A stretch of DNA of 64,000 nt, taken from positions 34,720,001-34,784,000 of the forward strand of contig NC_135808.1 of the NCBI RefSeq assembly GCF_964213995.1, given 5' to 3'. This DNA comes from Mustelus asterias. Taxonomy: Eukaryota. Positions 13,951-63,430 of the stretch are shown piece by piece. A program made the position numbers and the translations under genes. The notes below the pieces were generated by a model. It did not search any database. It saw nothing but the letters and a program-made list of their open reading frames with translations, and was not told the origin of the DNA. Each line of letters starts with the position of its first letter. Positions within the stretch are counted from its first letter, which is position 1.

Positions 13951-14413
13951 TTAGTGGCAGAGTGGCACAGTGGCTAGCACTGCTACCTCCCTCCAGGGAA
14001 CTCGGTTCAATTCCAGCCTTGGGCGACTGTCTTTTTGGAGTTTGTATGTTCTCCTTGTGTCTGCATGGGTTTCCTCTGGTGCTCTGGTTTTCTCCCACAG
14101 TCCAAAGATGTGCAGGTTAGTTGCATTGGCCATGCTAAATTGTCCCTTAGTGTCCAAGAATGTGGAGATTAGATGGGATCAGCCATAGTAAATGTGTGGG
14201 ATTATAGGGATAGGGTGAGGAAGAGGGCTGGGTAAAATACTCTGTTAGAGAGTTGGTGCTAATTGAGCACACTCAAAATGAGTGCCATGTTCGAGTCTTT
14301 ACGTCGCTCGTCGACGTGATTGTCTACCTCTAGCGAATCCACAGTCAGGGGACTACTGATCTAAACTGAGGCCAGATTATAAGGTCAAATCAGGGGTACT
14401 ACCCTCCCAAGAT

Positions 14414-15091
14414 CTAATTGGGGCTACTGAGCCAAGTTGTTGGCACCCAGTGCACGAAACTCCACCACCTCAGGACTGATAGAATAGGCCGAATCAAGAC
14501 TGAAAAATTAAAGAGACTATTAACTATACTAAAAGCCCCAAGTGTGGGAAAAATGGTATTACAGGGCTTACAAAATAACGTGTCTATGGGATAGTGTATT
14601 ATTACCTCACTACCCTTAGTTCGGTCCTGAGTTGGCTCTATGCTAACAGTCTCGATGAAGGTACCAGAAGTACCAACATCGCTTACGGTATTTTTGCTTA
14701 TTTCTAAGCTTCCCGAACCCACATTCTGGGCTTTATAGGCCTTATTATAGAAGGTAACTGTAGTTAACTCAACTACGTCATCCGTTGGATGGGCCGTCCA
14801 AACGGGCTCCTCTACAATAGGTTCAAGGTCCTCAACTACTGGGGTAGCTACCTTACCTGGACTGGGACCAGAATATACCACCCAATAGTGCCGATAGTTT
14901 AACTCGGGTCTCAAGGCTGTCTCTTCTGTTTGAGTGGAGACGGAACTTGTCTCTAGCTTCTTAGGGCTAGTTCTAGTATAGCCTAACTTTTTGAATTTTT
15001 CCCAAAGAGCGGCTACAGACTCATCTGGGGGGCTGTTATTTAACCGGGACCCAACCCATCCGGATTCCCCCTTTTCGGGAGTACTATTCAT
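14414..15091 (-). pseudogene. Truncated N-terminus of an R2-like ORF
   Basis: 225-aa ORF directly after the ribozyme; IIHYPIDTLFCKPCNTIFPTLGAFS is the CxxC half of a C2H2 finger with no His pair, consistent with a deletion junction near 14525. Confidence 0.65.
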
Positions 15092-15168
15092 TTCGCTAAC
15101 CGCCTATATCAAATCGCACAAATCTCTCTGTGGACTATCTATCTACGGTCTCTGCGTTGTTTTTAACA

Positions 15169-15331
15169 AAGTTGTTTAGCCCTTGGTGGCAAGCCACCAA
15201 GGTTACCGACGGGGCCGCGAGGAGGCACAACTTCACTGTGAATGCCAAAACACGCCAATAACATTCACAGAGGTAACTACCCAGAGATGACTCTCTAGTG
15301 AGACCCTTCTAAGAGTCATAGTTACTCCCGC
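15169..15331 (-). ncRNA. HDV-like self-cleaving ribozyme (R2 5' ribozyme)
   Basis: P1 (G)GCGGG/CCCGUC, P2 AAGUUGU/ACAACUU, P3 GCC/GGC, L3 UCCUCGC, P1.1 CC/GG, P4 CCUUGGUGG-CUUG-CCACCAAGG, J4/2 GCUAA with the candidate catalytic C at 15179. Confidence 0.9.
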
Positions 15332-15891
15332 ATGGGCTGAATGGCTTCTTCTGCACTGTTGGGATTCTGTGAATGCCACTGCATCTCCTGTTACAGGGAG
15401 AAGGCAGGAGACTGGCAGATGAGTTGCTCATTCGATAAGTAGTGCAGACATGATGGGCTGAATGGGCTCCTTCTATGCTGTAACAGTGCAGAGTGTCCTT
15501 CACTACACTAAGATCTGATAACATTATTGGGTCAAACAGCGTAGGCTCTGATTTTCTGCATTAATTGTCTTTTCCTGGCTGAAACCAGACTGGGTGCACT
15601 AAAATGGAAATTTCCCTCAGATGACTGTACGGCAGGAAGTAAAACGGTCGACATGATGCAAAGACTGACCCCATTTCCAGCCAGGAAGGGATTGTTTTAT
15701 GTCCAGGTCTGTTTCCCCTTGTGAAGATGCTCTGAGTGTTGATCTGTGATGGGACAGCCCTGTATCTGGGGTTAGTGTCCATATATCTCAAACTGTTTTA
15801 CTGGGGTGTTTCACCACAGCTAAGCTCAGGTCACCAACTCACCCGGGAGATGCAAAGGGGCTGAGTTATTTAGAAGCGTTGTGATAAAATG

Positions 15892-15957
15892 TGAACTCCA
15901 GGAGAGAATGTCTCTCAGCAACAGATGACAACCTGGTGTTCTAAATTCCTATTGGTC
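15892..15957 (+). promoter_or_regulatory. MHC class II S-X-Y promoter module
   Basis: X1 CTCAGCAACAGATG (15914-15927; HLA-DRA X1 is CCTAGCAACAGATG), X2-like TGACAA, a 20-nt spacer, Y box CCTATTGGTC (15948-15957), S-like TGAACTC at 15892. Confidence 0.85.
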
Positions 15958-16256: not shown

Positions 16257-19200
16257 CATAAGAACATAAGAAATAGGAGCAGAAGTAGGCCATCTAGCCC
16301 CTCGAGCCTGCCCCGCCATTCAATAAGATCATGGCTGATCTGACGTGGATCAGTACCACTTACCCGCCTGATCCCCATAACCCTTAATTCCCTTACTGAT
16401 CAGGAATCCATCCATCCGCGCTTTAAACATATTCAGCGAGGTAGCCTCCACCACCTCAGTGGGCAGAGAATTCCAGAGATTCACCACCCTCTGGGAGAAG
16501 AAGTTCCTCCTCAACTCTGTCTTAAACCGACCCCCCTTTATTTTGAGGCTGTGTCCTCTAGTTTTAACTTCCTTACTAAGTGGAAAGAATCTCTCCGCCT
16601 CCACCCTATCCAGCCCCCGCATTATCTTATAAGTCTCCATAAGATCCCCCCTCATCCTTCTAAACTCCAACGAGTACAAACCCAATCTCCTCAGCCTCTC
16701 CTCATAATCCAAACCCCTCATCTCCGGTATCAACCTGGTGAACCTTCTCTGCACTCCCTCCAATGCCAATATATCCTTCCTCATATAAGGGGACCAATAC
16801 TGCACACAGTATTCCAGTTGCGGCCTCACCAATGCCCTGTACAGGTGCATCAAGACATCCCTGCTTTTATATTCTATCCCCCTCGCAATATAGGCCAACA
16901 TCCCATTTGCCTTCTTGATCACCTGTTGTACCTGCAGACTGGGCTTTTGCGTCTCATGCACAAGGACCCCCAGGTCCCTTTGCACGGTAGCATGTTTTAA
17001 TTTGTTTCCATTGAGATAGTAATCCCATTTGTTATTATTTCCTCCAAAGTGTATAACCTCGCATTTCTCAACGTTATACTCCATTTGCCATATCCTCGCC
17101 CACTCACTCAGCCTGTCCAAATCTCTCTGCAGATCTTCTCCGTCCTCCACACGATTCACTTTTCCACTTAACTTTGTGTCGTCTGCAAACTTCGTTACCC
17201 TACACTCTGTCCCCTCCTCCAGATCATCTATATAAATGGTAAATAGTTGCGGCCCGAGTACCGATCCCTGCGGCATGCCACTAGTTACCTTCCTCCAACC
17301 GGAAAAACACCCATTTATTCCGACTCTTTGCTTCCTGTCGGATAGCCAGTCCCCAATCCACTTTAACACACTACCCCCAACTCCGTGTGCCCTAATCTTC
17401 TTCAGCAGCCTTTTATGGGGCACCTTATCAAAAGCCTTTTGGAAATCCAAAAACACCGCATCCACCGGTTCTCCTCCATCAACCGCCCTAGTCACATCTT
17501 CATAAAAATCCAACATGTTCGTCAAGCACGACTTTCCCCTCATGAATCCATGCTGCGTCTGATTGATCGAACCATTTCTATCCAGATGCCCTGCTATCTC
17601 CTCTTTAATAATGGATTCCAGCATTTTCCCTACTACAGACGTTAAGCTGACCGGCCTATAGTTACCCGCCTTTTGTCTCCATCCTTTTTTAAACAGCGGC
17701 GTAACATTAGCCGTTTTCCAATCAACCGGCACTACCCCAGAATGCAACGAGTTTTGATAAATAATCACTAACGCATCCACTATTACCTCTGACATTTCTT
17801 TCAATACCCTGGGATGCATTCCATCCGGACCCGGGGACTTGTCCACCTTCAGTCCCATTAGTCTACCCAGCACTGCCTCTCTGGTAACATTAATTGTATT
17901 AAGTATTTCTCCTGCTGCCAACCCTCTATCGTTAATATTTGGCAAACTATTTGTGTCCTCCACCGTGAAGACCGACACAAAAAACTTATTTAAAGACTCA
18001 GCCATATCCTCATTTCCCACTATTAACTCCCCCCTCTCCTCCTCCAAGGGTCCAACATTCACTCTAGCCACTCTATTCCTTTTTATATATTTATAAAAAC
18101 TTTTACTATCATTTTTTATATTAATTGCTAGCCTAGCTTCATAGTCTATCCTTCCTTTCTTTATCGCTTTCTTAGTCTCTCTTTGTTGTTTCTTAAATTT
18201 TTCCCAATCACTTGTTTCTCCACTATTTTTGGCCACTCTGTACGCAGCTGTTTTTATTTTAATACTCTCCTTTATTTCCTTCGTTATCCACGGCTGGTTC
18301 TCCCTTTTCTTACAATCCTTGTTTTTTGCTGGAATATATTTTTGCTGAGAACTGAAAAGGATCTCCTTAAAAATCCTCCACTGTTCCTCAGCTATCCTAC
18401 CTGCCAGCCTGCTCTCCCAGTCTACCTTAGCCAATTCATCCCTCATCCTATCATATTTCCCTCTGTTCAAACAGAGGACACTGGTTTGGGACCAAACTTT
18501 CTCCTCTTCCATCTGAATCAGAAATTCGACCATATTGTGGTCACTAGACCCAAGAGGGTCCTTCACAATAAGATCCTTAATTCTACCTACCTCGTTACAC
18601 AATACCAGATCCAAAATAGCTCGTTCCCTCGTCGGTTCCGTAACATGCTGTTCAAGGAAACTATCCCGACAGCATTCTAAGAACTCTTCCTCCATTCCAC
18701 CCTTACCGACTTGAGTCTGCCAGTCAATGTGCATGTTGAAGTCCCCCATGATTATTGCCATTCCGTTTTTACACGCATCCCTTATCTGCTTGTTTATAGC
18801 CCTCCCTACCTCAACATTATTATTTGGGGGCCTATATACCACACCTACTAGTGTCTTTCTCCCTCTACTATTCCTCATCTCTACCCATAATGATTCCACG
18901 TTTTGTTCCTCAGAGCCTATGTCATCCCTCAGTACTACCCTGATATTATCTCTTATTAATAGCGCGACCCCACCACCTTTTCCTTCCTGTCTATTCTTCC
19001 TAAACGCCTGAAACCCCTGGATATTCATCTCCCAGTCCTGGTCACCTTTCAGCCACGTTTCTGTAATGGCCACTAGATCGTACCCACTTGTGCTGATTTG
19101 CACCATCAACTCATTTACCTTGTTCCGAATGCTTCGTGCATTCAGGCAAAGTGTCCTTATTCCAGCTTTTATCTGGACCCGCTTTGATGAGTCGCGAACA

Positions 19201-19418
19201 CCCTCTCCCTCTACTCCCTTATCTAAATTACCGCCTTCATTCACTTGCACCCTCTCCTCTACCATTAATTTTGTAATTCCCCTTACCCCTGCATCCTCCC
19301 CCCCCATCAATTAGTTCCTTGATCCTAGTCAACTCTTCTAGCTCCCCTCCCCCCAACCTATCTAGTTTAAATTCTCCCCAGTAGCCTTAGCCAACCTACC
19401 GGCCAGGATATTGGTCCC
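16257..19418 (-). mobile_element. Young CR1 LINE, 5'-truncated in ORF1, intact ORF2
   Basis: ORF1 tail GTNILAGRLAKATGENLN*, uninterrupted ORF2, (TTCTTATG)n tail. Confidence 0.97.
16350..19310 (-). CDS. CR1 ORF2 (APE endonuclease + reverse transcriptase), 986 aa
   Basis: LNARS, AITETW, GDFN, SDHN, SPGPDG, PQGSVLGP and FADDTK motifs with no stops. Confidence 0.95.
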   Translation of the reverse strand: MMGGEDAGVRGITKLMVEERVQVNEGGNLDKGVEGEGVRDSSKRVQIKAGIRTLCLNARSIRNKVNELMVQISTSGYDLVAITETWLKGDQDWEMNIQGFQAFRKNRQEGKGGGVALLIRDNIRVVLRDDIGSEEQNVESLWVEMRNSRGRKTLVGVVYRPPNNNVEVGRAINKQIRDACKNGMAIIMGDFNMHIDWQTQVGKGGMEEEFLECCRDSFLEQHVTEPTRERAILDLVLCNEVGRIKDLIVKDPLGSSDHNMVEFLIQMEEEKVWSQTSVLCLNRGKYDRMRDELAKVDWESRLAGRIAEEQWRIFKEILFSSQQKYIPAKNKDCKKRENQPWITKEIKESIKIKTAAYRVAKNSGETSDWEKFKKQQRETKKAIKKGRIDYEARLAINIKNDSKSFYKYIKRNRVARVNVGPLEEERGELIVGNEDMAESLNKFFVSVFTVEDTNSLPNINDRGLAAGEILNTINVTREAVLGRLMGLKVDKSPGPDGMHPRVLKEMSEVIVDALVIIYQNSLHSGVVPVDWKTANVTPLFKKGWRQKAGNYRPVSLTSVVGKMLESIIKEEIAGHLDRNGSINQTQHGFMRGKSCLTNMLDFYEDVTRAVDGGEPVDAVFLDFQKAFDKVPHKRLLKKIRAHGVGGSVLKWIGDWLSDRKQRVGINGCFSGWRKVTSGMPQGSVLGPQLFTIYIDDLEEGTECRVTKFADDTKLSGKVNRVEDGEDLQRDLDRLSEWARIWQMEYNVEKCEVIHFGGNNNKWDYYLNGNKLKHATVQRDLGVLVHETQKPSLQVQQVIKKANGMLAYIARGIEYKSRDVLMHLYRALVRPQLEYCVQYWSPYMRKDILALEGVQRRFTRLIPEMRGLDYEERLRRLGLYSLEFRRMRGDLMETYKIMRGLDRVEAERFFPLSKEVKTRGHSLKIKGGRFKTELRRNFFSQRVVNLWNSLPTEVVEATSLNMFKARMDGFLISKGIKGYGDQAGKWY

Positions 19419-31069: not shown

Positions 31070-34000
31070 GCATATTAAAAGGGGAAGATAAAGAAACGGA
31101 CGTCATTATACACATTGGTGGAAATGACATAGATAGGAAGAGTAGGGGGGTCCTAAGAGAGCAATTCAGGGAGTTGGGAAATAGATTAAAAAGTAGGGTC
31201 ACTAGGGTGGCCATCTCTGGGCTGCTCCCAATGCCTCGTGCCAGTGAGGCTAAGAATAGGGAGTGGGTTCAAATGAATGCCTGGCTAAAGGACTGGTCCA
31301 GGAGGGAGGGCTTTATTTTCATAGACCAATGGGAGGTTTTCAGGAGAGGATGGCACCTGTACAAGAGGGAGGGGTCACAACTAAGTTGGAAGGGCACAAA
31401 TATCCTGGCTGGGAGCTTTGCTAGTGCAGTTCGGGGGGGTTTAAACTAGTATGGCAGGGGGGTGGGGATCAAACTATTAGGTCTATACGTGTGGTGGCTG
31501 GGGACGAGCTTGGGGCTGGGACAAGGCTGGCAAAGAAGAAGAGCACTCTGGGGGAGGACGACCTCACTGAGCCTGGGGGTCTGGAGTGCTTATACTTCAA
31601 TGCAAGGAGCGTAGCAGGTAAAACAGACGAACTTGGGGCCTTAATGCGCACGAGGAATTTGGATGTGGTTGCGGTGACAGAGACTTGGTTGAAAGAGGGA
31701 CAAGACTGGCAGCTGAATATTCCAGGGTACAAGTGTTTTAGGCGAGACAGACGAGGGGCCAAAAGAGGTGGGGGAGTAGCGGTATTGGTTGGAGAGCATA
31801 TTACAGCGGTGCAGAGGGAGGACAATTCAGAGGAGTCGTGTAGCGAGTCACTCTGGGTGGAGCTTAGAAACAGGAAAGGCGCAGTCACTATGTTGGGGGT
31901 GTACTACAGGCCCCCCAACAGCCCAAGGGAAGTGGAAGAATGGATATGTCAGGAGATACTGGATAGGTGCAGGAAATATAGGGTTGTTGTAGTGGGAGAC
32001 TTCAATTTCCCTGGTATAGACTGGAAATCGCTGAGGGCAGGGACTCTGGATGGGGAGGAATTTGTAAAATGTGTACAGGAGGGTTCGTTGGAACAATATG
32101 TGAACAGCCCGACTAGAGAGGGGGCTATACTGGACCTGGTACTGGGGAATGAGCCCGGTCAGGTCTTCAAAGTTTTGGTTGGGGAACATGTGGCAAATAG
32201 TGACCACAATTCTGTTAGCTTTAGGATAGTGATGGAAAAGGATGAGTTGTGTCCCAAGGGTAAGGTGTTGGATTGGGGGAAGGCTAATTTTGTTGGGATC
32301 AGGCAGAAATTGGCAGCTCTTGATTGGGAGAGGCTGTTTGAGGGTAAATCCACATCTGGTATGTGGCAGTCTTTTAAGGAACGGTTGTTAGGGCTACAGG
32401 ACAAGCATGTGCCTGTAAAAAAGAAGGATAGGAAGGGTAGGATTAGAGAACCGTGGATAACCAGGGAAATTGAGGGACTGGTCAAAAGGAAAAGAGAGGC
32501 GTATGTTAGGTCCAAGCAGCTAAAAACAGAGGGAGCTCTGGAGGAGTACATTGAAAGTAGGAAAATACTCAAACGGGGAATTAGAAGAGCAAAAAGGGGT
32601 CACGAAATGTTCTTGGCAGACAGGATTAAGGAGAATCCCAAGGCATTTTATTCATACGTTAGGAACAAAAGGGTTGTTAGGGAAAAAATCGGACCTCTCA
32701 GGGACAAAAGTGGGGACTTATGCTTGGAGCCCAAAGAGGTAGGGGAGATCCTAAATGAATACTTTGCGTCGGTATTCACAAAGGAGAGGGATGTGTTGAC
32801 TGGGAGTGTCTCGGAGGGGAGTGTTGAACCGTTGGAGAAAATCTCCATTACAAAGGAGGAAGTGTTAGGTTTGTTAGAGAATATAAAGACTGACAAATCC
32901 CCAGGGCCTGATGGAATCTATCCAAGGCTGCTCAGGGAGACGAGAGGTGAAATCGTTGGGCCTCTGACGCAAATCTTTGTCTCGTCACTGGACACAGGTG
33001 AGGTCCCAGAGGATTGGAGGATAGCCAATGTGGTCCCGTTATTTAAGAAGGGTAGGAAGGATAACCCGGGTAATTATAGGCCGGTGAGCTTGACGTCCGT
33101 GGTGGGGAAGTTGTTGGAGAAGATTCTTAAAGATAGGATGTATGCGCATTTAGAAAGGAATAAACTCATTAACGATAGTCAACATGGTTTTGTGAGAGGG
33201 AGGTCATGCCTCACTAACCTGGTGGTGTTTTTTGAAGAAGTGACCAAAATGGTTGACGAAGGAAGGGCCGTGGATGTTGTCTATATGGACTTTAGTAAAG
33301 CGTTTGACAAAGTCCCTCATGGTAGGCTAGTGAAAAAGGTTGGATCCCATGGGATAAAGGGGGAGGTGGCTAGATGGGTGGAGAACTGGCTTGGTCATAG
33401 AAGACAGAGGGTGGTAGTGGAAGGGTCTTTTTCCGGCTGGAGGCCTGTGACTAGTGGTGTTCCGCAGGGCTCTGTATTGGGACCTCTGCTGTTTGTGATT
33501 TACATAAATGATCTGGAAGAAGGAGTAACTGGGGTGATCAGTAAGTTTGCGGACGACACAAAACTGGCAGGACTTGCAGACAGTGAGGAACATAGTCAGA
33601 GGCTACAGAAGGATATAGATAGGCTGGAAATTTGGGCAAGGAAATGGCAGATGGAGTTCAATCCTGATAAATGCGAAGTGATGCATTTTGGTGGGAATAA
33701 TGTAGGGAGGAGCTACACGATAAATGGAAGAACCATAAAGGGTGTAGAGACGCAGAGGGACCTGGGTGTGCAAGTCCACAGATCTTTGAAGGTGACGTCA
33801 CAGGTGGAGAAGGTGGTGAAGAAGGCATATGGCATGCTTGCCTTTATAGGACGGGGCATAGAGTATAAAAGTTGGGGTCTGATGTTGCAGATGTATAGAA
33901 CGTTGGTTCGGCCGCATTTGGAATACTGCGTCCAGTTCTGGTCGCCACACTACCAGAAGGACGTGGAGGCTTTGGAGAGAGTACAGAGGAGGTTTACCAG

Positions 34001-34844
34001 GATGTTGCCTGGTATGGAGGGGCTTGGTTATGAGGAGAGATTGGGGAAACTGGATTTGTTCTCCTTGGAAAGACGGAGGATGAGGGGAGACTTAATAGAG
34101 GTGTATAAAATTATGAAAGGCATAGATAGGGTGAACGGTGGGAAGCTTTTCCCCGGGTCGGTGGTGACATTCACGAGGGGTCATAGGTTCAAGGTGAAGG
34201 GGGGGAGGTTTAACACAGATATCAGAAGGACATATTTTACACAGAGGGTCGTGGGGGCCTGGAATGTGTTGCCGGGCAAGGTGGTGGAGGCGGACACACT
34301 GGGAACGTTTAAGACTTATCTAGACAGCTATATGAACGGAGTGGGAATGGAGGGATACAAAAGAGTGGTCTAGTTGGACCGGGGAGCGGCGCGGGCTAAT
34401 TGTTCCTTGTTTCTCGTTTTAAGGCTTAATTCTATGATGTTCGTGGAAGTGGAAATTACTAGGGTTGGGAAGCATTTTCCGATCAGGGCCATTGTGATCT
34501 CCTGGACTCGTTTCGATCGCCTCAGGGGGTCGGAGAGGAATTTCCCAGATTTTTTTTTCCCCATATTGGCCCTGGGGTTTTTCACTCTGGGTTTTCGCCT
34601 CTCCCTGGAGATCACATGGTCTGGAATGGGGGGGTGGGGGTGAGTTAATAGGTTGTAATGAACAAAGCATCGTAGCTGTGAGGGACAGCTCGGTGGATAG
34701 GATATTGGTATGTAGATAGGCTGGAAAATTGGGCGGGGATCCTGGATTCAGGATTCATTCCTGGACCGGGGAGCGGCGCGGGCTTGGAGGGCCGAGGGGC
34801 CTGTTCCTGTGCTGTATTGTTCTTTGTTCTTTGTTCTTTGTTCT
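31070..34844 (+). mobile_element. Young CR1 LINE: ORF1 3' part (SGNH esterase-like), intact ORF2, extended 3' UTR
   Basis: ORF1 reads IIHIGGNDI...ISGLLP...KGTNIL; 960-aa ORF2; (TTCTTTG)n tail; interrupts an older repeat at 30900-31069 and 34845-35030. Confidence 0.97.
31491..34373 (+). CDS. CR1 ORF2 (APE endonuclease + reverse transcriptase), 960 aa
   Basis: Complete motif set YFNARS, VTETW, GDFNFP, SDHN, GVPQGSVLGP, FADDTK with no stops. Confidence 0.95.
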   Translation: MVAGDELGAGTRLAKKKSTLGEDDLTEPGGLECLYFNARSVAGKTDELGALMRTRNLDVVAVTETWLKEGQDWQLNIPGYKCFRRDRRGAKRGGGVAVLVGEHITAVQREDNSEESCSESLWVELRNRKGAVTMLGVYYRPPNSPREVEEWICQEILDRCRKYRVVVVGDFNFPGIDWKSLRAGTLDGEEFVKCVQEGSLEQYVNSPTREGAILDLVLGNEPGQVFKVLVGEHVANSDHNSVSFRIVMEKDELCPKGKVLDWGKANFVGIRQKLAALDWERLFEGKSTSGMWQSFKERLLGLQDKHVPVKKKDRKGRIREPWITREIEGLVKRKREAYVRSKQLKTEGALEEYIESRKILKRGIRRAKRGHEMFLADRIKENPKAFYSYVRNKRVVREKIGPLRDKSGDLCLEPKEVGEILNEYFASVFTKERDVLTGSVSEGSVEPLEKISITKEEVLGLLENIKTDKSPGPDGIYPRLLRETRGEIVGPLTQIFVSSLDTGEVPEDWRIANVVPLFKKGRKDNPGNYRPVSLTSVVGKLLEKILKDRMYAHLERNKLINDSQHGFVRGRSCLTNLVVFFEEVTKMVDEGRAVDVVYMDFSKAFDKVPHGRLVKKVGSHGIKGEVARWVENWLGHRRQRVVVEGSFSGWRPVTSGVPQGSVLGPLLFVIYINDLEEGVTGVISKFADDTKLAGLADSEEHSQRLQKDIDRLEIWARKWQMEFNPDKCEVMHFGGNNVGRSYTINGRTIKGVETQRDLGVQVHRSLKVTSQVEKVVKKAYGMLAFIGRGIEYKSWGLMLQMYRTLVRPHLEYCVQFWSPHYQKDVEALERVQRRFTRMLPGMEGLGYEERLGKLDLFSLERRRMRGDLIEVYKIMKGIDRVNGGKLFPGSVVTFTRGHRFKVKGGRFNTDIRRTYFTQRVVGAWNVLPGKVVEADTLGTFKTYLDSYMNGVGMEGYKRVV

Positions 34845-41499: not shown

Positions 41500-44400
41500 T
41501 GGGCAGTATTTTCCCAAAATGAGGCTAAATGTCAATTTTGGCCTGAAAACTAGTGTTAATCCCGCCAGCTCGATCCAAACTGTAATGAAAGATGCTTTAA
41601 AAAAAGCTATTCCCACATGAAAATAAGCTGCACCAGAGGCACAATGTTTCAGAGTCGCCCCCTCCGGGGGTCATCTGAGCAGTTCACTCTCGGGGGTGCT
41701 GCATTTAAACAGCTCCAGAGCACTTACTCACAGTCAACCCAAGAGGATGGAAGCAAGAAAACCAGCTCCAAAGATCACAGAGGGGGCCTCCACACGAATG
41801 TTAGATGCTGTGGAGGAGTGAAAGGAAATATCTGCTCTAAGGTGGGCAGGAGATCCTCCAGTAAGGTCACCAACCCCACATGGGAGACTGTGGCTGCACT
41901 GGTGAGTGCCAGCACCTTCCACAAGAGGACAGAGGTTCAATGCCAGAAGAAAATGAACGATCTTCTCTGTGCTACCAGTTGCTTCTTGTCTTCTGTCACC
42001 ACCCTCTCTCTCTCAGAAACCCCTCACCATGCCACATGGACCACATGCTGCCACCTTGCTGTGCTCCACCACCTGACCTCCCGCACACTTCCTCATCTCC
42101 CCGAGGCTTCTCTCCTCATCATCCATCCTGACTCACACACACAGCGCCCACACATGCCAGGCATCACTGCCATCTGACCCTGCACACAGCCTACTAACAT
42201 CATTCCCATCTGTCTCCCTGCAGGATAAACTTGCTCATAACCGCCATGAGCGAGAAAAGATGGGGGATGGCAGGGCAGAGCCAAGGATCCTGACTCCTTT
42301 CGAGGAGCGCGCACTGGAGCTCGTAAGGGGGGAGCGGGAGCGGGACTGGGCCTGAGAGAGAGAAAAGTGAGGAGCCTCTGCCTTTCATCCGTCTTCCCAA
42401 ACTCACGTGAGTTCTGTCTCTCCCAGACCATGCACTAATCACATGTCCCTTTCCTTACAGGAAAATTACCCGAGCAGTGTGTCCCCTCCACCTGCAGGGA
42501 TCCTGCGCCAAGCCAGGAACAGCCTACTGAGGAGATGTCACTGGAGCACACTGAAGAGGTATCACAGCTGCACCCTCCGCCAGCACAGAGACAGACACTT
42601 CCATGAGCAATCATAGCAGGCAGGCTTCAGAGTGAACAGCTTACTGCATCCGATCCACATCAGGTGGAGGCTGGAACATTCCAGGGATTAGATAGTCAGA
42701 GGTCTGCTGGATCCTAGGACTCAGCTGTGCCCCAGGCAGGTGCTGTACCTCAGGACACATTCATCCCTCATCTGCTAGAGATGCAAAGTCAGAGCCGGGA
42801 ATAACAGGAAGTGGTGTCAGCGACACTCCTGAGATTGCAGGGCCAAATGGAGGAGTCCCAGGCCTTTTCTTACAGGATATTTTGCCGGCAATGCGAGGCA
42901 CCCGGGCCAAAACTGCAAGAGTGGTGTCCGCAGTGGAGAGCCTGGGCTTGTAGTCAGATCCATGGTACGAAGTATCTAAAGCTTGGCTCAGTCCACGAGC
43001 TCCATGGTTCAGGCATTGAACTCAATGGTTCAGGGCATCAACCAGGTGGTGCAGACACTGGTGGCAATCTAAGAGTGCCAGCGTCAGAGGACATTGAGGT
43101 TTCTGGATTTCAGTCCAGCTGCCTTTCTATCCCATGGAGTGACCCAGAGGCCCATGAGGGCCCAAAGGGAGGAGGCTCCACTGGTGCACAGCCTTCTACC
43201 CAGGAGACCCCGGGAGTGTCCAGTCCATCTGACTTCCCGCTTCCAGAAACCTCTCTATGAGATGAAGTAATCTCAGTGCAAGTGTTCCACTCGCATTGAC
43301 AGGACACAGTAATGCAACAGGGAATCCTCTGACTGAACCCCAAATCCCTGAGATAGCATCAGGAGAGACGACTGACCCCGCATCATCGCGATGAGATGAC
43401 CCAGGCACGAGGGAGTCAGCGAGCTGCCATCAGACAGGCAACAGTCAGACTTTAGCAGAGTCTCTGAGGGGCATCACAGGCTACTCCTCACTGCGGGTCA
43501 TCTTCATCCCTCTGCATTGATGGGATTCCCCATTACCAGCTTCCTGAGTTGTGACTCCTCACAACCTCCACTCCCCCCTGCCCCCCCCACCCCATCCTGA
43601 AGGGGTAACCAAGTGTCTACCCTAATCTTCGCCCTCCAGAAACCACGGAGTGATTTGGGTGTCTCTAGCCTTCCTGCCATGCGCACCCTTGCCCCTGCCT
43701 GGCTGCCTTCCTCCGCTTCCTGTGGAGATTCCTCCTCTACTTCCACCTCATCCGAGGAGACTGCCCGCTCCTTCAGGTCCTCTGCTGATAACTCCTCAAG
43801 GTTGTGGACGGAGCAGCAGACTAGCACAATGCAGGAGACCCTCCGGGGGCGATACTGTAGGGCTCCACGTGGCCTGTCCAGGCAGCGAAGCACATCTTGA
43901 GGAGGCTGATGGTCTTCTCAGTCACTGCGTGAGTCACAGTGTGTACCTTGTAACTGCTCTCCACAGCAGTCTGTGGCCTCCGCCTTGGCATCATCAGCCA
44001 TGCCCTGAGGGAGATATTCCTTGTCCCCGAGGAGCCATCCCTGAAGCATTGAGTATCCCTCGCAAGTTCCGGGATCTGGGACTAGCCAAGAATGAAGCTG
44101 TTGTGGACACTCCCCAGGAAACTGGCACACAGCTGCATTATCCATCTAATGTGCTCACAGACCAGCGGCACATTCAGGAAGTGGAAATCCTTTCAGTTAA
44201 TGAATGGTCATGAGACTCCCTGGTGCCATGGGGCGCAGAGAGGCACATGGGTGAAGTCAATTGCCCCGGCACCTGTGGCAGACCAGCTATCTGCCCGAAC
44301 CCTGAGGAACATTCATCCTGGCTGGCTTGGTCGAGGTCAAAATGAATATAGTCCCTCACCCGGGAATAAAGAACATCCAAAACCCCATGGATGCACTTCT

Positions 44401-46600
44401 GGGAGGATGCCTGCAAGATTCCACACAGGTTCCCCATGGAGTCCTGGAAATATTCAGAGCTACTGTGGCCTTCACGGCCACAGGCAGAAGGTACCCTTCT
44501 GAACCGCATGATGCCAAGTCTGTGAGGCAAAGGTGGCAAATGTGTCTCACTGTCTGCTTGGTCAGCCGGAGACTCTGGCAGCACATGCTGTTGGTGAACT
44601 CCATGAAGGAGAGCCGAGGATGGTAGACTCTTGGCTGACACCTGCATCTTCAAGCTTGCTCTCCGGCGAGTGGGGCCTCCTGGTCATCATGGTGACACTC
44701 CAGTGTCAGTGCAGCCGCACGTTGATGCTGGAGCCTCTCCTTGTCTCTCATTGTGCTCAATATCATTGCTCGCTCCAATGGCTCCATCGGAGTAGAGAGA
44801 GTGAGGTTTGTGATCCAACATCGTTTCCATCCCTTGACCCATTGGCTACCTTGACCTGGAAGCATCAAGTTCAGAAAAATCATTTGCAGTGCTCGCACAC
44901 ACACTTATATCAATTGCCCCCCTGCCCTCCCCCCCCCTCCCCCGCCGTCGACCCCCTCCCCCTGCCCTCCCCCGCCGTCGACGCACCCCCCCACCACCCC
45001 TGAATTTGCCCTCACCCACTCTGACTTGCAGCTGGCCCTCTGCCTGCAGCTGCTTTTCCTTGAGCATGGGGCCACTTGAGGATCTCTCAGGAGGGACCAT
45101 TGCACCTGGACATGGGTATCTGGGCAGTGAGGTGTGCTTTGGCAGGTGTGGACGGACTGGGGGGACGGGAAGGGGGATGGGGGGATGGGGAGGGGGATGG
45201 GGGGACGGGGAGGGGGATGGGGGGACGGGGAGGGGAACGGGGGGCACAGGAATTGTATGTGCAGGCGCTGCGGACCCCGGGGAGATGTGAGCCCCCTTGG
45301 CCCTTGTTCTCGAGGCACTCGCTGGCAGCCCTGACTCCTAAAGCTGAGTCTCAGCCTCGGATCTGGCACTGTGGGAAGCTGATGGTGCGAAGGGCCAACT
45401 CCTGAGGTCCAGTCAGTATAACGAGCATACTAACTGGGCATGATTGGTCCCTCTTCAGGGATTGGCTGTGCTAATAGGCACCCTGCTATCTCCAGCGGCA
45501 GATACCAGGGAGCTCATTGCTGCCATCCCTCCAAACTTAAAATCACCGCACCGTCAATACTCACCTGCAGCCAGTAACCCCCCCACCCTGTACCCTCCCC
45601 CCATACCCCCCACCCCCCCCCCCACCCTGCACCCTCCCCCCAACCCCACATCCCCCCCTCACCCCCACCCTGCACCCTCCCCCCATCCCCACATCCCCCC
45701 CTCACCCCCACCCTGCACCCTCCCCCCATCCCCACCCCCACACCCTCCCCTCACCCCCACCCCCACCCTGCACCCTCCCCCATCCCCACCCCCACATCCC
45801 CCCTCACCCCCACCCCCACCCTGCACCCTCCCCCCATCCCCACATCCCCCCCTCACCCCCACCCTGCACCCTTCCCCCATCCCCACCCCCACATCCCCCC
45901 CTCACCCCACCCCCACCCCCACCCTGCACCCTCCCCCCATCCCCCCACCCCCACCCTGCACCCTCCCCCCATCCCCACCCCCACATCCCCCCCTCACCCC
46001 CACCCCCACCCTGCACCCTCCCCCCATCCCCACATCCCCCCCTCACCCCCCCTGCACCCTCCCCCCATCCCCACCCCCACACCCTCCCCTCACCCCCACC
46101 CCCACCCTGCACCCTCCCCCATCCCCACCCCCACATCCCCACCCTCCACATGCAGGGAGCTTCAAGTAACATTTCTTTTGTGGGATCGCAACCAGCCTGC
46201 CAATCAGCTCAGGCTGCATGGCACTGAACACATTCCCGACCCCCGACCTCAACCTCAAAAACCCCCACAAACAGAGTCAGCTCGCACTGACTTACTCACC
46301 ACCAACAACAGACTCATTTTCCACCAAGTGCAAACTTACTGACCCCTGTGAGTAACGTCAATCACCCCGACAGCTGCCCTCTTGGTTTTCAACCCCCTCC
46401 CTGGGCTGGCCAGGGCCCTCTCTCCCCTTGAACCGCCTGGTGCTCCAGGGAGACATTTGTGCTCAGCTCCATTTTTAAACAGCAGCCGTGATTCGCGGCA
46501 GTCACGGCTGATGGGTGGGAAGATAAGTTGAGGGTGGAAGATGCAGTGTGAAGGCCGCTAAGTAATGTATTCTAATCCGCGCTAATCAGACTCGCACCCT
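41500..46600. mobile_element. Degenerate autonomous-type Harbinger/PIF transposon (Myb-like gene +, DDE transposase -)
   Basis: + strand WETVAALVSA...RTEVQCQKKMNDL; - strand LRLTKQTVRHIC...LPVAVKATVALN, GWLLGDK and RCLDRPRGALQY...IVLVCCSVHNL; TIR-like start GGGCAGTATTTTCCC. Confidence 0.85.
45577..46148. repeat. C-rich low-complexity minisatellite
   Basis: Recurrent CACCCTGCACCCTCCCCCCATCCCCAC and CACATCCCCCCTCACCCC units. Confidence 0.9.
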
Positions 46601-53892: not shown

Positions 53893-56385
53893 ATAGAACA
53901 TAGAACATAGAACAGGCCCTTCGGCCCACGATGTTGTGCCGAGCTTTATCCAAAACCAAGATCAAGCTATCCCACTCCCTATCATCCTGGTGTGCTCCAT
54001 GTGCCTATCCAATAACCGCTTAAATGTTCCTAAAGTGTCTGACTCCACTATCACTGCAGGCAGTCCATTCCACACCCCAACCACTCTCTGCGTAAAGAAC
54101 CTACCTCTGATATCTTTCCTATATCTCCCACCACGAACCCTATAGTTATGCCCCCTTGTAATAGCTCCATCCACCCAAGGAAATAGTCTTTGAACATTCA
54201 CTCTATCTATCCCCTTCATCATTTTATAAACCTCTATTAAGTCTCCCCTCAGCCTCCTCCGCTCCAGAGAGAACAGCCCCAGCTCCCTCAACCTTTCCTC
54301 ATAAGACCTACCCTCCAAACCAGGCAGCATCCTGGTAAATCTCCTCTGCACTCTTTCCAGCGCTTCCACATCCTTCTTATAGTGAGGTGACCAGAACTGC
54401 ACACAATATTCCAAATGTGGTCTCACCAATGTCCTGTACAGTTGCAGCATAACCCCACGGCTCTTAAACTCCAACCCCCTGTTAATAAAAGCTAACACAC
54501 TATAGGCCTTCTTCACAGCTCTATCCACTTGAGTGGCAACCTTTAGAGATCTGTGGATATGAACCCCAAGATCTCTCTGTTCCTCCACAGTCTTCAGAAC
54601 CCTACCTTTGACCCTGTAATCCACATTTAAATTAGTCCTACCAAAATGAATCACCTCACATTTATCAGGGTTAAACTCCATTTGCCATTTTTCAGCCCAG
54701 CTTTGCATCCTATCTATGTCTCTTTGCAGCCTACAACAGCCCTCCACCTCATCCACTACTCCACCAATCTTGGTGTCATCAGCAAATTTACTGATCCACC
54801 CTTCAGCCCCCTCCTCTAAGTTATTAATAAAAATCACAAAGAGCAGAGGACCAAGCACTGATCCCTGTGGCACTCCGCTAGCAACCTGCCTCCAATCCGA
54901 AAATTTTCCATCCACCACCACCCTCTGTCTTCGATCAGACAACCAGTTACCTATCCAATCGGCCAACTTTCCCTCTATCCCACACCTCCTCACTTTCATC
55001 ATAAGCCAACCATGGGGGACCTTATCAAACGCCTTACTAAAATCCATGTATATGACATCAACTGCCCTACCTTCATCAACACACTTAGTTACCTCCTCAA
55101 AAAATTCAATCAAATTTGTGAGGCACGACTTGCCCTTCACGAATCCGTGCTGACTATCCCGGATTAATCCGCATCTTTCTAAATGGTCGTAAATCCCATC
55201 TCTAAGGACCTTTTCCATTAATTTACCAACCACCGAAGTAAGACTAATCGGTCTATAATTACCAGGGTCATTTCTATTCCCTTTCTTAAACAGAGGAACA
55301 ACATTTGCCATTCTCCAGTCCTCTGGCACCATCCCCGTGGACAGTGAGGACCCAAAGATCAAAGCCAAAGGCTCTGCAATCTCATCCCTTGCCTCCCAAA
55401 GAATCCTAGGATACATTTCATCAGGCCCAGGGGACTTATCGACCTTCAGTTTATTCAAAACTGCCAGGACATCCTCCCTCCGAACATCTATTTCCTCCAG
55501 CCTATTAGCCTGTAACACCTTCTCTTCCTCAAAAACATGGCCCCTCTCCTTGGTGAACACTGAAGAAAAGTATTCATTCATCACCTCGCCTATCTCTACT
55601 GACTCCATACACAAGTTCCCACTACTGTCCTTGACCGGCCCTAACCTCACCCTGATCATTCTTTTATTCCTCACATAAGAGTAAAAAGCCTTGGGGTTTT
55701 CCTTGATCCGACCCGCCAAGGACTTCTCATGTCCCCTCCTAGCTCTCCTAAGCCCCTTTTTTAGCTCATACCTTGCTAACTTGTAACCCTCAATCGAGCC
55801 ATCTGAACCTTGTTTCCTCATCCCTACATAAGCTTCCCTCTTCCTTTTCACAAGACATTCCACCTCTTTCGTGAACCATGGTTCCCTCACTCGGCCATTT
55901 CCTCCCTGCCTGACAGGGACATACCTATCAAGGACACCCAGTATTTGTTCCTTGAAAAAGTTCCACTTTTCATTAGTTCCTTTCCCTGACAGTTTCTGTT
56001 CCCATCTTATGCCCCCTAATTCTTGCCTAATCGCATCATAATTACCTCTCCCCCAATTGTAAACCTTGCCCTGCTGTAAGGCCCTATCCCTCTCCATTGC
56101 AACAACAAAAGACACCGAATTGTGGTCACTATCTCCAAAGTGCTCTCCCACAACCAAATCTAACACTTGGCCCGGTTCATTTCCCAGTACCAAATCCAAT
56201 GTGGCCTCACCTCTTGTCGGCCTATCCACATAATGTGTCAGGAAACCCTCCTGCACACACTGCACAAAAACTGCCCCATCCGAACTATTTGACCTACAAA
56301 GGTTCCAATCAATATTTGGAAATTTAAAGTCCCCCATGACAACTACCCTGTGACCCCCACACATATCCATAATCTGCTTAGCAAT
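53893..56385 (-). mobile_element. Young CR1, 5'-truncated in the endonuclease, otherwise open ORF2 (802 aa)
   Basis: ORF 53962-56370 is uninterrupted; (TTCTATG)n tail. Confidence 0.95.
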
Positions 56386-60740: not shown

Positions 60741-63240
60741 CATAAGAACATAAGAACATAAGAAATAGGAGCAGGAGTAGGCCATCTAGCCCCTCGAGCC
60801 TGCCCCGCCATTCAATAAGATCATGGCTGATCTGACGTGGATCAGTACCACTTACCCGCCTGATCCCCATAACCCTTAATTCCCTTACCGATCAGGAATC
60901 CATCCATCCGCGCTTTAAACATATTCAGCGAGGTAGCCTCCACCACCTCAGTGGGCAGAGAATTCCAGAGATTCACCACCCTCTGGGAGAAGAAGTTCCT
61001 CCTCAACTCTGTCTTAAACCGACCCCCCTTTATTTTGAGGCTGTGTCCTCTAGTTTTAACTTCCTTACTAAGTGGAAAGAATCTCTCCGCCTCCACCCTA
61101 TCCAGCCCCCGCATTATCTTATAAGTCTCCATAAGATCCCCCCTCATCCTTCTAAACTCCAACGAGTACAAACCCAATCTCCTCAGCCTCTCCTCATAAT
61201 CCAAACCCCTCATCTCCGGTATCAACCTGGTGAACCTTCTCTGCACTCCCTCCAATGCCAATATATCCTTCCTCATATAAGGGGACCAATACTGCACACA
61301 GTATTCCAGCTGCGGCCTCACCAATGCCCTGTACAGGTGCATCAAGACATCCCTGCTTTTATATTCTATCCCCCTCGCAATATAGGCCAACATCCCATTT
61401 GCCTTCTTGATCACCTGTTGTACCTGCAGACTGGGCTTTTGCGTCTCATGCACAAGGACCCCCAGGTCCCTTTGCACGGTAGCATGTTTTAATTTGTTTC
61501 CATTGAGATAGTAATCCCATTTGTTATTATTTCCTCCAAAGTGTATAACCTCGCATTTATCAACGTTATACTCCATTTGCCATATCCTCGCCCACTCACT
61601 CAGCCTGTCCAAATCTCTCTGCAGATCTTCTCCGTCCTCCACACGATTCACTTTTCCACTTATCTTTGTGTCGTCTGCAAACTTCGTTACCCTACACTCC
61701 GTCCCCTCCTCCAGATCATCTATATAAATGGTAAACAGTTGCGGCCCGAGTACCGATCCCTGTGGCACGCCACTAGTTACCTTCCTCCAACCGGAAAAAC
61801 ACCCATTTATTCCGACTCTTTGCTTCCTGTCGGATAGCCAGTCCCCAATCCACTTTAACACACTACCCCCAACTCCGTGTGCCCTAATCTTCTTCAGCAG
61901 CCTTTTATGGGGCACCTTATCAAACGCCTTTTGGAAATCCAAAAACACCGCATCCACCGGTTCTCCTCCATCAACCGCCCTAGTCACATCTTCATAAAAA
62001 TCCAACATGTTCGTCAAGCACGACTTTCCCCTCATGAATCCATGCTGCGTCTGATTGATCGAACCATTTCTATCCAGATGCCCTGCTATCTCCTCTTTAT
62101 TAATGGATTCCAGCATTTTCCCTACTACAGACGTTAAGCTGACCGGCCTATAGTTACCCGCCTTTTGTCTCCTTCCTTTTTTAAACAGCGGCGTAACATT
62201 AGCCGTTTTCCAATCAACCGGCACTACCCCAGAATGCAACGAGTTTTGATAAATAATCACTAACGCATCCACTATTACCTCTGACATTTCTTTCAATACC
62301 CTGGGATGCATTCCATCCGGACCCGGGGACTTGTCCACCTTCAGTCCCATTAGTCTACCCAGCACTGCCTCTCTGGTAACATTAATCGTATTAAGTATTT
62401 CTCCTGCTGCCAACCCTCTATCGTTAATATTTGGCATACTATTTGCGTCCTCCACCGTGAAGACCGACACAAAAAACTTATTTAAAGACTCAGCCATATC
62501 CTCATTTCCCACTATTAACTCCCCCCTCTCGTCCTCCAAGGGTCCAACATTCACTCTAGCCACTCTATTCCTTTTTATATATTTATAAAAACTTTTACTA
62601 TCATTTTTTATATTAATTGCTAGCCTAGCTTCATAGTCTATCCTTCCTTTCTTTATCGCTTTCTTAGTCTCTCTTTGTTGTTTCTTAAATTTTTCCCAAT
62701 CACTTGTTTCTCCACTATTTTTGGCCACTCTGTCCGCAGCTGTTTTTATTTTAATACTCTCCTTTATTTCCTTCGTTATCCACGGCTGGTTCTCCCTTTT
62801 CTTACAATCCTTGTTTTTTGCTGGAATATATTTTTGCTGAGAACTGAAAAGGATCTCCTTAAAAATCCTCCACTGTTCCTCAGCTATCCTACCTGCCAGC
62901 CTGCTCTCCCAGTCTACCTTAGCCAATTCATCCCTCATCCTATCATATTTCCCTCTGTTCAAACAGAGGACACTGGTTTGAGACCAAACTTTCTCCTCTT
63001 CCATCTGAATCAGAAATTCGACCATATTGTGGTCACTAGACCCAAGAGGGTCCTTCACAATAAGATCCTTAATTCTACCTACCTCGTTACACAATACCAG
63101 ATCCAAAATAGCTCGTTCCCTCGTCGATTCCGTAACATGCTGTTCAAGGAAACTATCCCGACAGCATTCTAAGAACTCTTCCTCCATTCCACCCTTACCG
63201 ACTTGAGTCTGCCAGTCAATGTGCATGTTGCATGTTGAAG
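60741..63240 (-). mobile_element. Young CR1, 5'-truncated, near-identical to the 16257-19418 copy
   Basis: Translated ORF2 differs from the 986-aa copy at only about a dozen residues by eye; same 3' UTR and tail. Confidence 0.97.
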
Positions 63241-63313
63241 CATGTTGCATGTTGAAGCATTTCAATAGAACACCCAGTGCTGCTCGAACACCTGAATTGC
63301 TTCGCTTGTACAG

Positions 63314-63430
63314 AAGTGGGGAACACAACTGAACCAGAGAAACCCAAGATCAATGTTGGAGCTGTGGGATTTGGAATTGGACTGATCATCTTGCTGGCTG
63401 GAGTGATTATGAAGCTGAGGGATGTTAAAG
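63314..63430 (+). pseudogene. MHC class II beta connecting peptide/TM/cytoplasmic exon
   Basis: CAG acceptor, GTAAGA donor, phase 1/1; (E)VGNTTEPEKPKINVGAVGFGIGLIILLAGVIMKLRDVK(G) aligns without gaps to the class II beta pattern [29 protein letters not shown] (GxxGxxxGxxxxxxG). Confidence 0.92.

What the first reader, a model, noticed from the sequence alone, without database searches (positions are those of the whole stretch)
15169..15331. Complete HDV-like ribozyme whose predicted cleavage site coincides with the element's 5' end
Seen: every helix of the nested double pseudoknot is present: P2 7 bp (15233-15227 with 15175-15169), P3 GCC/GGC, L3 UCCUCGC as in the HDV antigenomic ribozyme, P1.1, P4 9 bp with a CUUG loop, and J4/2 GCUAA. 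The P1 3' strand CCCGUC pairs with 28S GGCGGG, which begins 28 nt upstream of the R2 target site. The genomic copy begins at GCGGG (-27). Inference: a self-cleaved RNA was reverse-transcribed to within 1 nt of its end. Loss of G1 may impair cleavage of this copy.
Basis: partly seen in the sequence, partly recalled or inferred. Interest (0 to 1): 0.85.

Follow-up and report, generated by a model that had tools for sequence, protein, structure and literature searches.

The report
Shark R2 retrotransposon ribozyme, off-target copy
This is the self-cleaving (HDV-like) ribozyme at the front of an R2 jumping gene in a shark, in a shortened copy that landed outside the ribosomal RNA genes and still carries the small piece of ribosomal sequence the ribozyme needs; it is a well-known kind of element seen in an unusual place.

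Summary
On the minus strand, 15331-15169 holds every helix of an HDV-like double pseudoknot at the stated coordinates. It begins with a 28S-like leader at 15331.

The ribozyme heads a 1072-bp element (15331-14260). Its ORF matches the N-terminus of R2 proteins up to an internal deletion at 14527/14526.

The element interrupts a very abundant interspersed repeat. Seven host bases are lost, and there is no target duplication and no A tail. It is therefore a retrotransposed copy lying outside rDNA.

Its first base corresponds to 28S position -27. That is one base inside the -28 site, which is the commonest R2 cleavage site in print (PMC3774820).

Three things remain untested:
- self-cleavage itself;
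- whether the cleavage register is -28 or -27;
- whether this shark lineage lives in rDNA or has dispersed.

No Rfam model reaches its threshold. The best match is the HDV ribozyme at 16.4 bits.

First readers of this scan noted at least five similar copies on other pieces of the same genome. I did not check them.

Verdict: a new member of a known kind, of moderate interest.

The parts
15305..15331 (-). 28S-derived leader, 27 nt in this copy. The first 5 nt (15331-15327, GCGGG) form the 5' strand of P1. The base homologous to 28S -28 is absent.
   Evidence: 28S sequence as printed in PMC3774820. The family's main contig has 2 more nt behind 15311.
15234..15326 (-). J1/2, 93 nt, predicted to fold on itself. 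An 8-bp helix joins 15325-15318 to 15280-15273 (leader paired with element-encoded antisense). There are two short hairpins and a 12-bp hairpin, 15270-15259 with 15247-15236.
   Evidence: minimum-free-energy fold.
15227..15233 (-). P2 5' strand, AAGUUGU.
   Evidence: 7 of 7 pairs with 15175-15169.
15214..15226 (-). P3 (GCC/GGC) enclosing L3 UCCUCGC. C15222 and C15221 form P1.1.
   Evidence: The core aligns to the HDV ribozyme consensus. It differs by one base from the CCUCCUCGUGG motif quoted for fly and zebra finch R2 in PMC5035012.
15206..15213 (-). P1 3' strand CCCGUC (15213-15208), followed by the GG of P1.1 (15207-15206).
15181..15205 (-). J1.1/4 UAA, then the P4 hairpin: 9 bp with a CUUG loop.
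15169..15180 (-). J4/2 GCUAA with the candidate catalytic C at 15179, then the P2 3' strand ACAACUU (15175-15169).
   Evidence: The role of the C is inferred from PMC3774820 and PMC11331408.
14414..15091 (-). ORF of 225 aa. Residues 9-187 are the N-terminal region of an R2 protein, up to the start of the first zinc finger. The last roughly 37 residues are read out of the 3' part.
   Evidence: The homologues P0003 and P0007 match solved R2 proteins.
14526..14527 (-). Internal deletion junction. Zinc fingers, Myb, reverse transcriptase and endonuclease are missing.
   Evidence: Protein homology ends at 14528. Contigs of three organisms all break at 14527, and the organism B contig runs on into different sequence.
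14260..14526 (-). 3' part, 267 nt, presumed R2 3' untranslated region. It has no coding match to R2 proteins and no A tail.
   Evidence: It has higher depth than the 5' part, and organism B has matches of about 90%. Its identity as a 3' UTR is inferred.
15332..15375 (.). Host interspersed repeat, upstream flank in the element's orientation.
   Evidence: depth 112,057 in X1; 335 loose ends at 15332. (paralogues).
14200..14259 (.). Host interspersed repeat, downstream flank. Seven host bases between the two flanks are missing.
   Evidence: joints 14259|15332 with letters between. (copy at 3525).

Best explanation
The stretch is the HDV-like self-cleaving ribozyme of an R2 non-LTR retrotransposon of a shark. 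It sits at the 5' end of a 1072-bp internally deleted copy made of 5' UTR, the first 188 codons and a 3' part.

Proposed course of events:
1. A donor R2 was transcribed together with upstream 28S-type sequence.
2. The ribozyme paired its CCCGUC strand with the GC-rich 28S stretch and cut just 5' of it, at -28.
3. This left an RNA that starts with about 28 nt of 28S-type leader.
4. R2 protein supplied in trans reverse-transcribed this RNA at a nick outside rDNA, inside an abundant interspersed repeat.
5. With no 28S sequence at the target for the cDNA end to anneal to, the 5' junction formed by end joining. The last base was lost along with 7 host bases.

Shown here: the fold, the leader, the R2 identity of the ORF, the deletion junction, and the exact insertion boundaries.

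Inferred: self-cleavage, its register, mobilisation in trans by R2 protein, and that this copy cleaves poorly.
For: - All helices are present, and P1 and P4 appear in the unconstrained fold.
- Core and leader are each unique in the window and unexpected by chance.
- The best Rfam match of the core is the HDV ribozyme.
- The ORF matches P0003 at E = 3e-23 and 1e-29.
- P0003 and P0007 match solved R2 proteins at 3e-107 and 2e-164, far better than LINE-1 ORF2 at about 1e-19 to 1e-27.
- The host repeat is interrupted exactly, with 7 nt lost, no target duplication and no A tail.
- The element's 3' end resembles no other LINE in the window.
- The copy differs from the family's main contig in organism A by 3 letters and 2 gaps over 500 nt, so it is young.
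- PMC3774820 reports -28 as the commonest R2 cleavage site, with P1 built from 28S -28 to -22. It also reports 5' duplications whose length equals the cleavage distance.
- PMC2718515 (passages) used 28S leaders on non-28S R1 copies in the same way, to infer transcript ends.
Against: - No Rfam family reaches threshold.
- There is no comparative support for the helices. The metagenome scans gave nothing usable, and the variant table was cut off at 15123, before the ribozyme.
- No RNA run was found.
- The first P1 pair is missing in this copy.
- The leader is not identical to 28S near the junction, in this copy and in the family contigs of two organisms. It may therefore be element sequence rather than freshly copied flank.
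- The main contig in organism A stops at 15327, so copies differ within the P1 strand.
- The organism B contig, which is not deleted at 14527, also has non-28S sequence upstream.
Confidence: 0.7

Rival explanations
1. The ribozyme is the same, but the lineage no longer depends on rDNA. The 28S-type leader has become part of the element (an internalised duplicate, as in the Figure 8 model of PMC3774820). The ribozyme would then cut at the element's own 5' end in any read-through transcript, and full-length and deleted copies would spread through the genome.
For: - The leader differs from 28S near the junction, and the difference is shared by contigs of organisms A and B.
- The organism B contig continues past 14527 (it is not deleted there) and has non-28S sequence upstream of the leader.
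- The closest named R2 proteins, from Scyliorhinus torazame, lie on contigs of 255 kb and 487 kb.
- Unchecked first-reader notes list at least five further off-rDNA copies in this genome.
- Non-specific R2 families exist in flatworms (PMC5035012, passages).
Against:
- In organism A the 5' region collapses into one contig of depth 275 with no variant contigs over 15040-15165. This fits homogenised rDNA copies as well as a recent burst.
- Junction variants are also propagated by rDNA-resident R2 (PMC3774820).
- R2 copies outside rDNA are known as dead ends in Drosophila (PMC2718515).
Confidence: 0.2
2. Cleavage in this family is at -27, not -28. G15331 would then be the true first nucleotide, paired with U15209 as a G-U like the cleavage-site pair of HDV. 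The cDNA would have been copied to the very end, and this copy's ribozyme would be complete.
For: - The copy starts exactly at that G.
- The Rfam alignment places U15209 at the last position of the P1 3' strand of HDV.
- PMC3774820 reports one R2 (termite Kf) with cleavage at -27.
Against: - C15208 would then separate P1 from P1.1, which is not the usual architecture. With cleavage at -28, P1 is 6 bp and the GG of P1.1 follows directly.
- An unchecked note describes a 166-letter copy. That length equals this copy plus the 2-nt gap plus one more base.
- The three bases upstream of the aligned part in organism B read like -28 to -26. This is weak: a chance of 1 in 64.
Confidence: 0.2
3. R2 RNA or a fragment of it was inserted by the machinery of another LINE, such as the CR1/L2-like elements with long ORFs in this window. 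Alternatively, the piece was moved as DNA from an R2-bearing rDNA unit.
For: Four long reverse-transcriptase ORFs of endonuclease/phosphatase-type LINEs lie in the same window.
Against: - There is no target duplication and no A or microsatellite tail.
- The 3' end shares nothing with other elements in the window.
- 28S homology starts within one base of the predicted cleavage site and there is none downstream. The host repeat is broken cleanly. These features are unlike a DNA rearrangement.
Confidence: 0.05
4. The fold is a chance resemblance with no ribozyme function.
For: No Rfam hit reaches threshold. The strict descriptor still hits 9 times in 1000 shuffled windows.
Against: The fold lies exactly where R2 ribozymes lie: downstream of a 28S leader whose 5' end supplies P1, and upstream of an R2 ORF. 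The core matches the HDV and R2 consensus.
Confidence: 0.01

Closest known systems
R2 retrotransposon HDV-like ribozymes that cleave at -28 in 28S (earwig, silkmoths, flour beetle A, zebra finch and other birds; PMC3774820, PMC11331408)
   Same: - Same double-pseudoknot order.
- P1 5' strand supplied by the GC-rich 28S stretch that starts at -28.
- Long structured J1/2.
- Conserved CCUCCUCG-type core.
- C in J4/2.
- Position at the 5' end of an R2 ORF.
   Different: - It is found in a shark, for which no ribozyme is described in the papers I could search.
- The copy is outside rDNA.
- The first P1 pair is missing.
- The leader departs from 28S near the junction.
- Activity is untested.
Hepatitis delta virus ribozymes (Rfam RF00094)
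   Same: P3-L3-P3' reads GCC UCCUCGC GGC and J4/2 reads GGCUAA, aligned to the HDV consensus. PMC3774820 notes that some R2 ribozymes have converged on the HDV active-site sequence.
   Different: - Score is 16.4 bits against a gathering score of 50.
- P1 lies 93 nt upstream.
- P4 is unrelated.
- It is a cellular retrotransposon, not a viral genome.
No call tested it beyond the legend of Figure 6 in PMC3774820.
R2 SIDEs, short internally deleted elements of Drosophila (PMC3414825; abstract and outline seen only)
   Same: R2 5' ribozyme joined to an R2 3' end by internal deletion, with no reverse transcriptase of its own. It would have to be mobilised in trans.
   Different: - Drosophila SIDEs sit at the 28S site; this copy does not.
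- It keeps 188 codons of the ORF.
- No second copy with the same junction was seen, so a propagating family is not shown.
Non-28S insertions of R1 carrying upstream 28S sequence, and extra-rDNA R2 copies, in Drosophila (PMC2718515; passages)
   Same: Off-target copies keep 7-28 bp of 28S leader, which is read as the 5' end of the transcript that was used. Insertions are often in repeated DNA.
   Different: Those leaders belong to R1, which has no ribozyme-defined end. Here the leader start falls within one base of a predicted ribozyme cleavage site.
[quoted passage not shown]
   Same: R2-clade elements inserted outside rRNA genes.
   Different: They are flatworm families shown to be dispersed from many young copies. 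Here only one copy was examined, and no vertebrate case is reported in that paper.

Membership tests
HDV-like self-cleaving ribozyme (R2 type) | Five helices P1, P1.1, P2, P3, P4 in the nested double-pseudoknot order | tested here: met
   P2 7/7, P3 3/3, P1.1 2/2, P4 9/9, P1 5/5 for the part present. The sixth P1 pair lacks its 5' base in this copy.
HDV-like self-cleaving ribozyme (R2 type) | Cytosine in J4/2 just before the P2 3' strand, and conserved C-C and G in L3 | tested here: met
   C15179 in GCUAA; L3 UCCUCGC. Their roles are taken from PMC3774820 and PMC11331408.
HDV-like self-cleaving ribozyme (R2 type) | Site-specific self-cleavage 5' of P1 that depends on the J4/2 cytosine | not testable with these tools
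   Needs an in vitro assay or mapping of RNA 5' ends. No RNA run holds the stretch.
HDV-like self-cleaving ribozyme (R2 type) | Helices supported by compensatory changes among relatives | tested here: inconclusive
   No related sequence could be fetched. The organism B contig has 54 differences, but those beyond 15123 were not listed.
Rfam RF00094 HDV_ribozyme | Score at or above the gathering score of 50 bits | tested here: not met
   16.4 bits, E = 1.2 on the core alone; nothing in the wider searches. The model has no long J1/2 and no pseudoknot pairs. I do not file the stretch under this viral family.
R2 non-LTR retrotransposon | ORF of R2 type (N-terminal zinc fingers and Myb, reverse transcriptase, C-terminal endonuclease) | tested here: inconclusive
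   Only the first 187 residues are present. They match P0003, which matches solved R2 proteins. The rest is deleted.
R2 non-LTR retrotransposon | Inserted at the specific site of the 28S rRNA gene | tested here: not met
   Both flanks are an interspersed repeat, and there is no rRNA match in the window. This copy is an R2 derivative by descent, not a canonical R2 insertion.
R2 non-LTR retrotransposon | 28S sequence upstream of the R2 site at the 5' junction | tested here: met
   20 of 20 bases match the 28S stretch printed in PMC3774820. The last 7 bases of the leader differ.
R2 SIDE (short internally deleted element) | 5' ribozyme joined to the R2 3' end that the R2 protein recognises | tested here: inconclusive
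   The ribozyme is present. The 3' 267 nt is repeated and conserved in organism B, but no full-length R2 of this species was available to show that it is the 3' UTR.
R2 SIDE (short internally deleted element) | Several copies sharing the same deletion, showing propagation | tested here: inconclusive
   No listed contig bridges 14527/14526. Other joints (14440 to 14570, 14440 to 14700) show different deletions. Contigs drop rare variants.

The most novel reading that the evidence does not exclude
A shark R2 lineage has taken the 28S P1 strand into the element itself. The ribozyme would then be portable and define the element's own 5' end in any transcript. That would let full-length R2 and its deletion derivatives multiply outside rDNA, which would be the first R2 in a vertebrate without target specificity.
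Probability: 0.2. Interest if true: 0.65.

Novelty: new member of a known kind. Interest (0 to 1): 0.38.

Why it matters
R2 ribozymes and their -28 cleavage site are well studied and are now used to build RNA templates for gene insertion. An off-target copy that starts within one base of the predicted cut is a natural footprint of the RNA 5' end that was used in vivo, in a vertebrate group where the ribozyme has not been described.

If the shark family proves to be dispersed rather than resident in rDNA, it would show how a site-specific element can escape its target by carrying the target-derived half of its ribozyme with it.

Tried and rejected
- **Rfam.** The whole window at gathering thresholds gave nothing. 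E-value searches of 14600-15900 and 14100-14700 gave nothing relevant: a mir-769 hit at E = 1.1, taken as chance. Only the 86-nt core gave the HDV model, and below threshold.
- **Pfam on the 225-aa ORF.** Nothing.
- **Solved structures with the ORF itself.** Nothing at E up to 10.
- **Fetching related copies.**
  - The search for homologous proteins gave one short relative, P0001.
  - The search for related loci with P0001 in metagenomes matched 205 stretches by pattern, none confirmed.
  - A DNA pattern of the ribozyme core in metagenomes gave 67 loci. 0 of 67 have a 28S-like leader within 400 nt upstream. 66 are G+C-rich (0.58-0.77) bacterial-looking contigs. The one A+T-rich locus, L053, reads as an open coding stretch with no leader. 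I took all 67 as chance matches and did not test their other helices.
- **Covariation.** No covariation test and no covariance model could be made as a result.
- **The search of earlier findings by sequence.** Blank.
- **Tandem repeats around the element.** None.
- **Other R2 pieces in the window.** None by blastn or tblastn.
- **Trans-mobilisation by a neighbouring LINE, and DNA-level transfer from rDNA.** Both were considered and set low. Reasons are given under the rival explanations.
- **Supplements.** Figure S2 of PMC3774820 (structures of 18 further R2 ribozymes) and the SI tables of PMC12247875 (the list of cartilaginous-fish R2s) may hold this lineage or its ribozyme.

Full report
**What is there.**
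The feature lies on the minus strand.
- P2: 15233-15227 with 15175-15169, 7 of 7 pairs.
- P3: GCC with GGC.
- L3: UCCUCGC.
- P1.1: CC 15222-15221 with GG 15207-15206.
- P4: 9 of 9 pairs with a CUUG loop.
- J4/2: GCUAA, including C15179.
- P1 3' strand: CCCGUC (15213-15208). Its first five bases pair with GCGGG at 15331-15327.
- J1/2: 93 nt.

The unconstrained fold of the 163 nt has an energy of -64.4 kcal/mol, z = -4.18, and 0 of 200 shuffles fold as well. It contains P1 and P4 as predicted. It folds J1/2 into an 8-bp helix between the leader and an element-encoded antisense stretch, plus a 12-bp hairpin. Forcing P2, P3 and P4 costs only about 3 kcal/mol. The two nested halves of the pseudoknot are therefore about equally stable.

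**Is it more than chance?**
- The 21-nt core and the 20-nt leader each occur once in the window, against expectations of 0 and 0.02 at up to 3 mismatches.
- A loose HDV-like descriptor of my own finds only this site in the real window and 14 sites in 200 shuffled windows.
- A strict descriptor finds this site and 9 sites in 1000 shuffled windows.
- Both descriptors were written after seeing the hit, so these figures are only a guide.
- The stronger argument is position. The fold lies just downstream of a 28S leader whose own 5' end supplies P1, and 78 nt upstream of an R2 reading frame.

Rfam counts against the claim. Nothing reaches a gathering score. On the core alone the HDV ribozyme model is the best of three weak hits, at 16.4 bits and E = 1.2 against a gathering score of 50. 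In that alignment the P3-L3 core and GGCUAA match the consensus, while P1 is wrongly sought next to P2.

**What it belongs to.**
The 225-aa ORF (14414-15091) has no Pfam match. It does match six proteins in the representative library. The best long one is P0003, at E = 3e-23 in that search and 36% identity with E = 1e-29 by BLASTP. P0003 carries a reverse transcriptase domain. P0003 and its catshark relative P0007 match solved R2 retrotransposon proteins at 3e-107 and 2e-164, far above LINE-1 ORF2.

Homology stops at residue 187-188, which is base 14528, inside the first zinc finger. Nothing in 14260-14527 encodes R2 protein. Contigs from three organisms all break at 14527, and the organism B contig runs on into other sequence there. 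By my own by-eye translation, that continuation reads as the rest of the zinc finger; no tool tested this. The copy is thus internally deleted: 5' UTR with ribozyme, 188 codons, then 267 nt that I take to be the 3' UTR. That last point is inferred from its higher depth and its conservation in organism B.

**Where it sits.**
Both flanks belong to one very abundant interspersed repeat, with a depth of 112,057 at 15334-15375 in X1 against about 275 over the element. Many contigs join 14259 to 15332 with a few letters between. There are 335 loose ends at 15332 that carry the repeat's own continuation. A paralogue at 3525 shows the uninterrupted sequence.

The element is therefore a 1072-bp insertion that removed 7 host bases, with no target duplication and no A tail. 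Its 3' end resembles nothing else in the window. It differs from the main family contig of organism A by 3 letters and 2 gaps in 500 nt, so it is young. One of those gaps is a 2-nt gap in the leader.

**The 5' end.**
The leader's first 20 bases equal bases 2-21 of the 28S stretch printed in PMC3774820. The host repeat ends at 15332, so the copy starts at the base homologous to -27. The base at -28, which would pair with C15208, is absent.

I read the Results and Discussion of PMC3774820. It reports -28 as the commonest R2 cleavage site, with P1 made of 28S -28 to -22. It also reports that R2 copies which insert without annealing carry 28S duplications whose length equals the cleavage distance. 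PMC11331408 (passages) reports efficient cleavage at -28 for native ribozymes, including an avian one. PMC2718515 (passages) used 28S leaders on off-target R1 copies in the same way.

**What remains open.**
- First, the register. With cleavage at -28, P1 has 6 pairs and P1.1 follows directly, which is the usual layout. With cleavage at -27, G15331 would pair with U15209 as a G-U, as at the HDV cleavage site, and nothing would be missing. But C15208 would then separate P1 from P1.1.
- Second, the family. The main contig in organism A stops at 15327, so copies differ within the P1 strand. The organism B contig has non-28S sequence upstream. The leader differs from 28S near the junction in both organisms. 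These points leave room for a lineage that carries its leader as its own sequence and spreads outside rDNA.
- Third, there is no RNA evidence and no covariation evidence. The related-sequence routes failed or were closed, and the variant table was cut off before the ribozyme.

**Comparison with what is known.**
It works like the R2 ribozymes that cleave at -28. By descent it is an R2 derivative resembling the Drosophila SIDEs (PMC3414825, abstract only). It fails the defining R2 feature of sitting in the 28S gene. R2 is recorded in sharks: PMC5035012 names R2Sqj in a passage, and PMC12247875 has passages on the group. Neither text describes their ribozymes, off-rDNA copies or deletion derivatives. 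Searches for HDV-like plus ribozyme plus shark gave two papers, neither on this subject. Supplements were closed and may hold more.

First readers of this scan noted at least five similar copies on other pieces of the same genome. I could not check them. Their lengths (166, 163 and 158 letters) suggest slightly ragged 5' ends.

**Verdict.**
The feature is a new member of a known kind, and the main open question is whether this shark lineage has left rDNA.

Noticed in passing
window 16350-19310 (-), 31491-34373 (+), 53962-56370 (-), 60842-63328 (-): Four long ORFs (986, 960, 802 and 828 aa) with reverse-transcriptase similarity. The first has endonuclease/phosphatase plus RVT_1 domains. They look like young copies of a CR1/L2-like LINE family and are unrelated to R2 (23-30% identity in the reverse transcriptase only).
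   Followed up: partly
window 15332-15375 and 14200-14283; paralogues near 3525, 15453, 39068: The host repeat broken by the element is extremely abundant: summed contig depth is 112,057 in one run against about 275 for the R2 part. It is shared with organisms B and C.
   Followed up: partly
window 15325-15318 with 15280-15273; 15270-15259 with 15247-15236: In the predicted fold the 28S leader pairs with an element-encoded antisense stretch inside J1/2. A 12-bp hairpin follows. The long J1/2 appears built to bring P1 next to the core.
   Followed up: partly
window 14440-14700 and 14825-15266: Contigs of organism A join 14440 to 14570, 14440 to 14700 (with 51 other letters between) and 14825 to 15266. 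Other deletion variants of the same R2 family therefore exist.
   Followed up: no
window 14527-15327, contig of organism B (run X6): A 998-nt contig of a related species is about 93% identical. It runs past the deletion junction into different sequence, and it has non-28S sequence directly upstream of the leader. This suggests a non-deleted R2 copy outside 28S in that species.
   Followed up: partly
window 42001-46000: A G+C-rich stretch (0.56-0.61, against about 0.45 elsewhere) was not examined.
   Followed up: no
window 15741-15822 (+): A weak match to the mir-769 precursor model (19.1 bits, E = 1.1, gathering score 57). Taken as chance.
   Followed up: no
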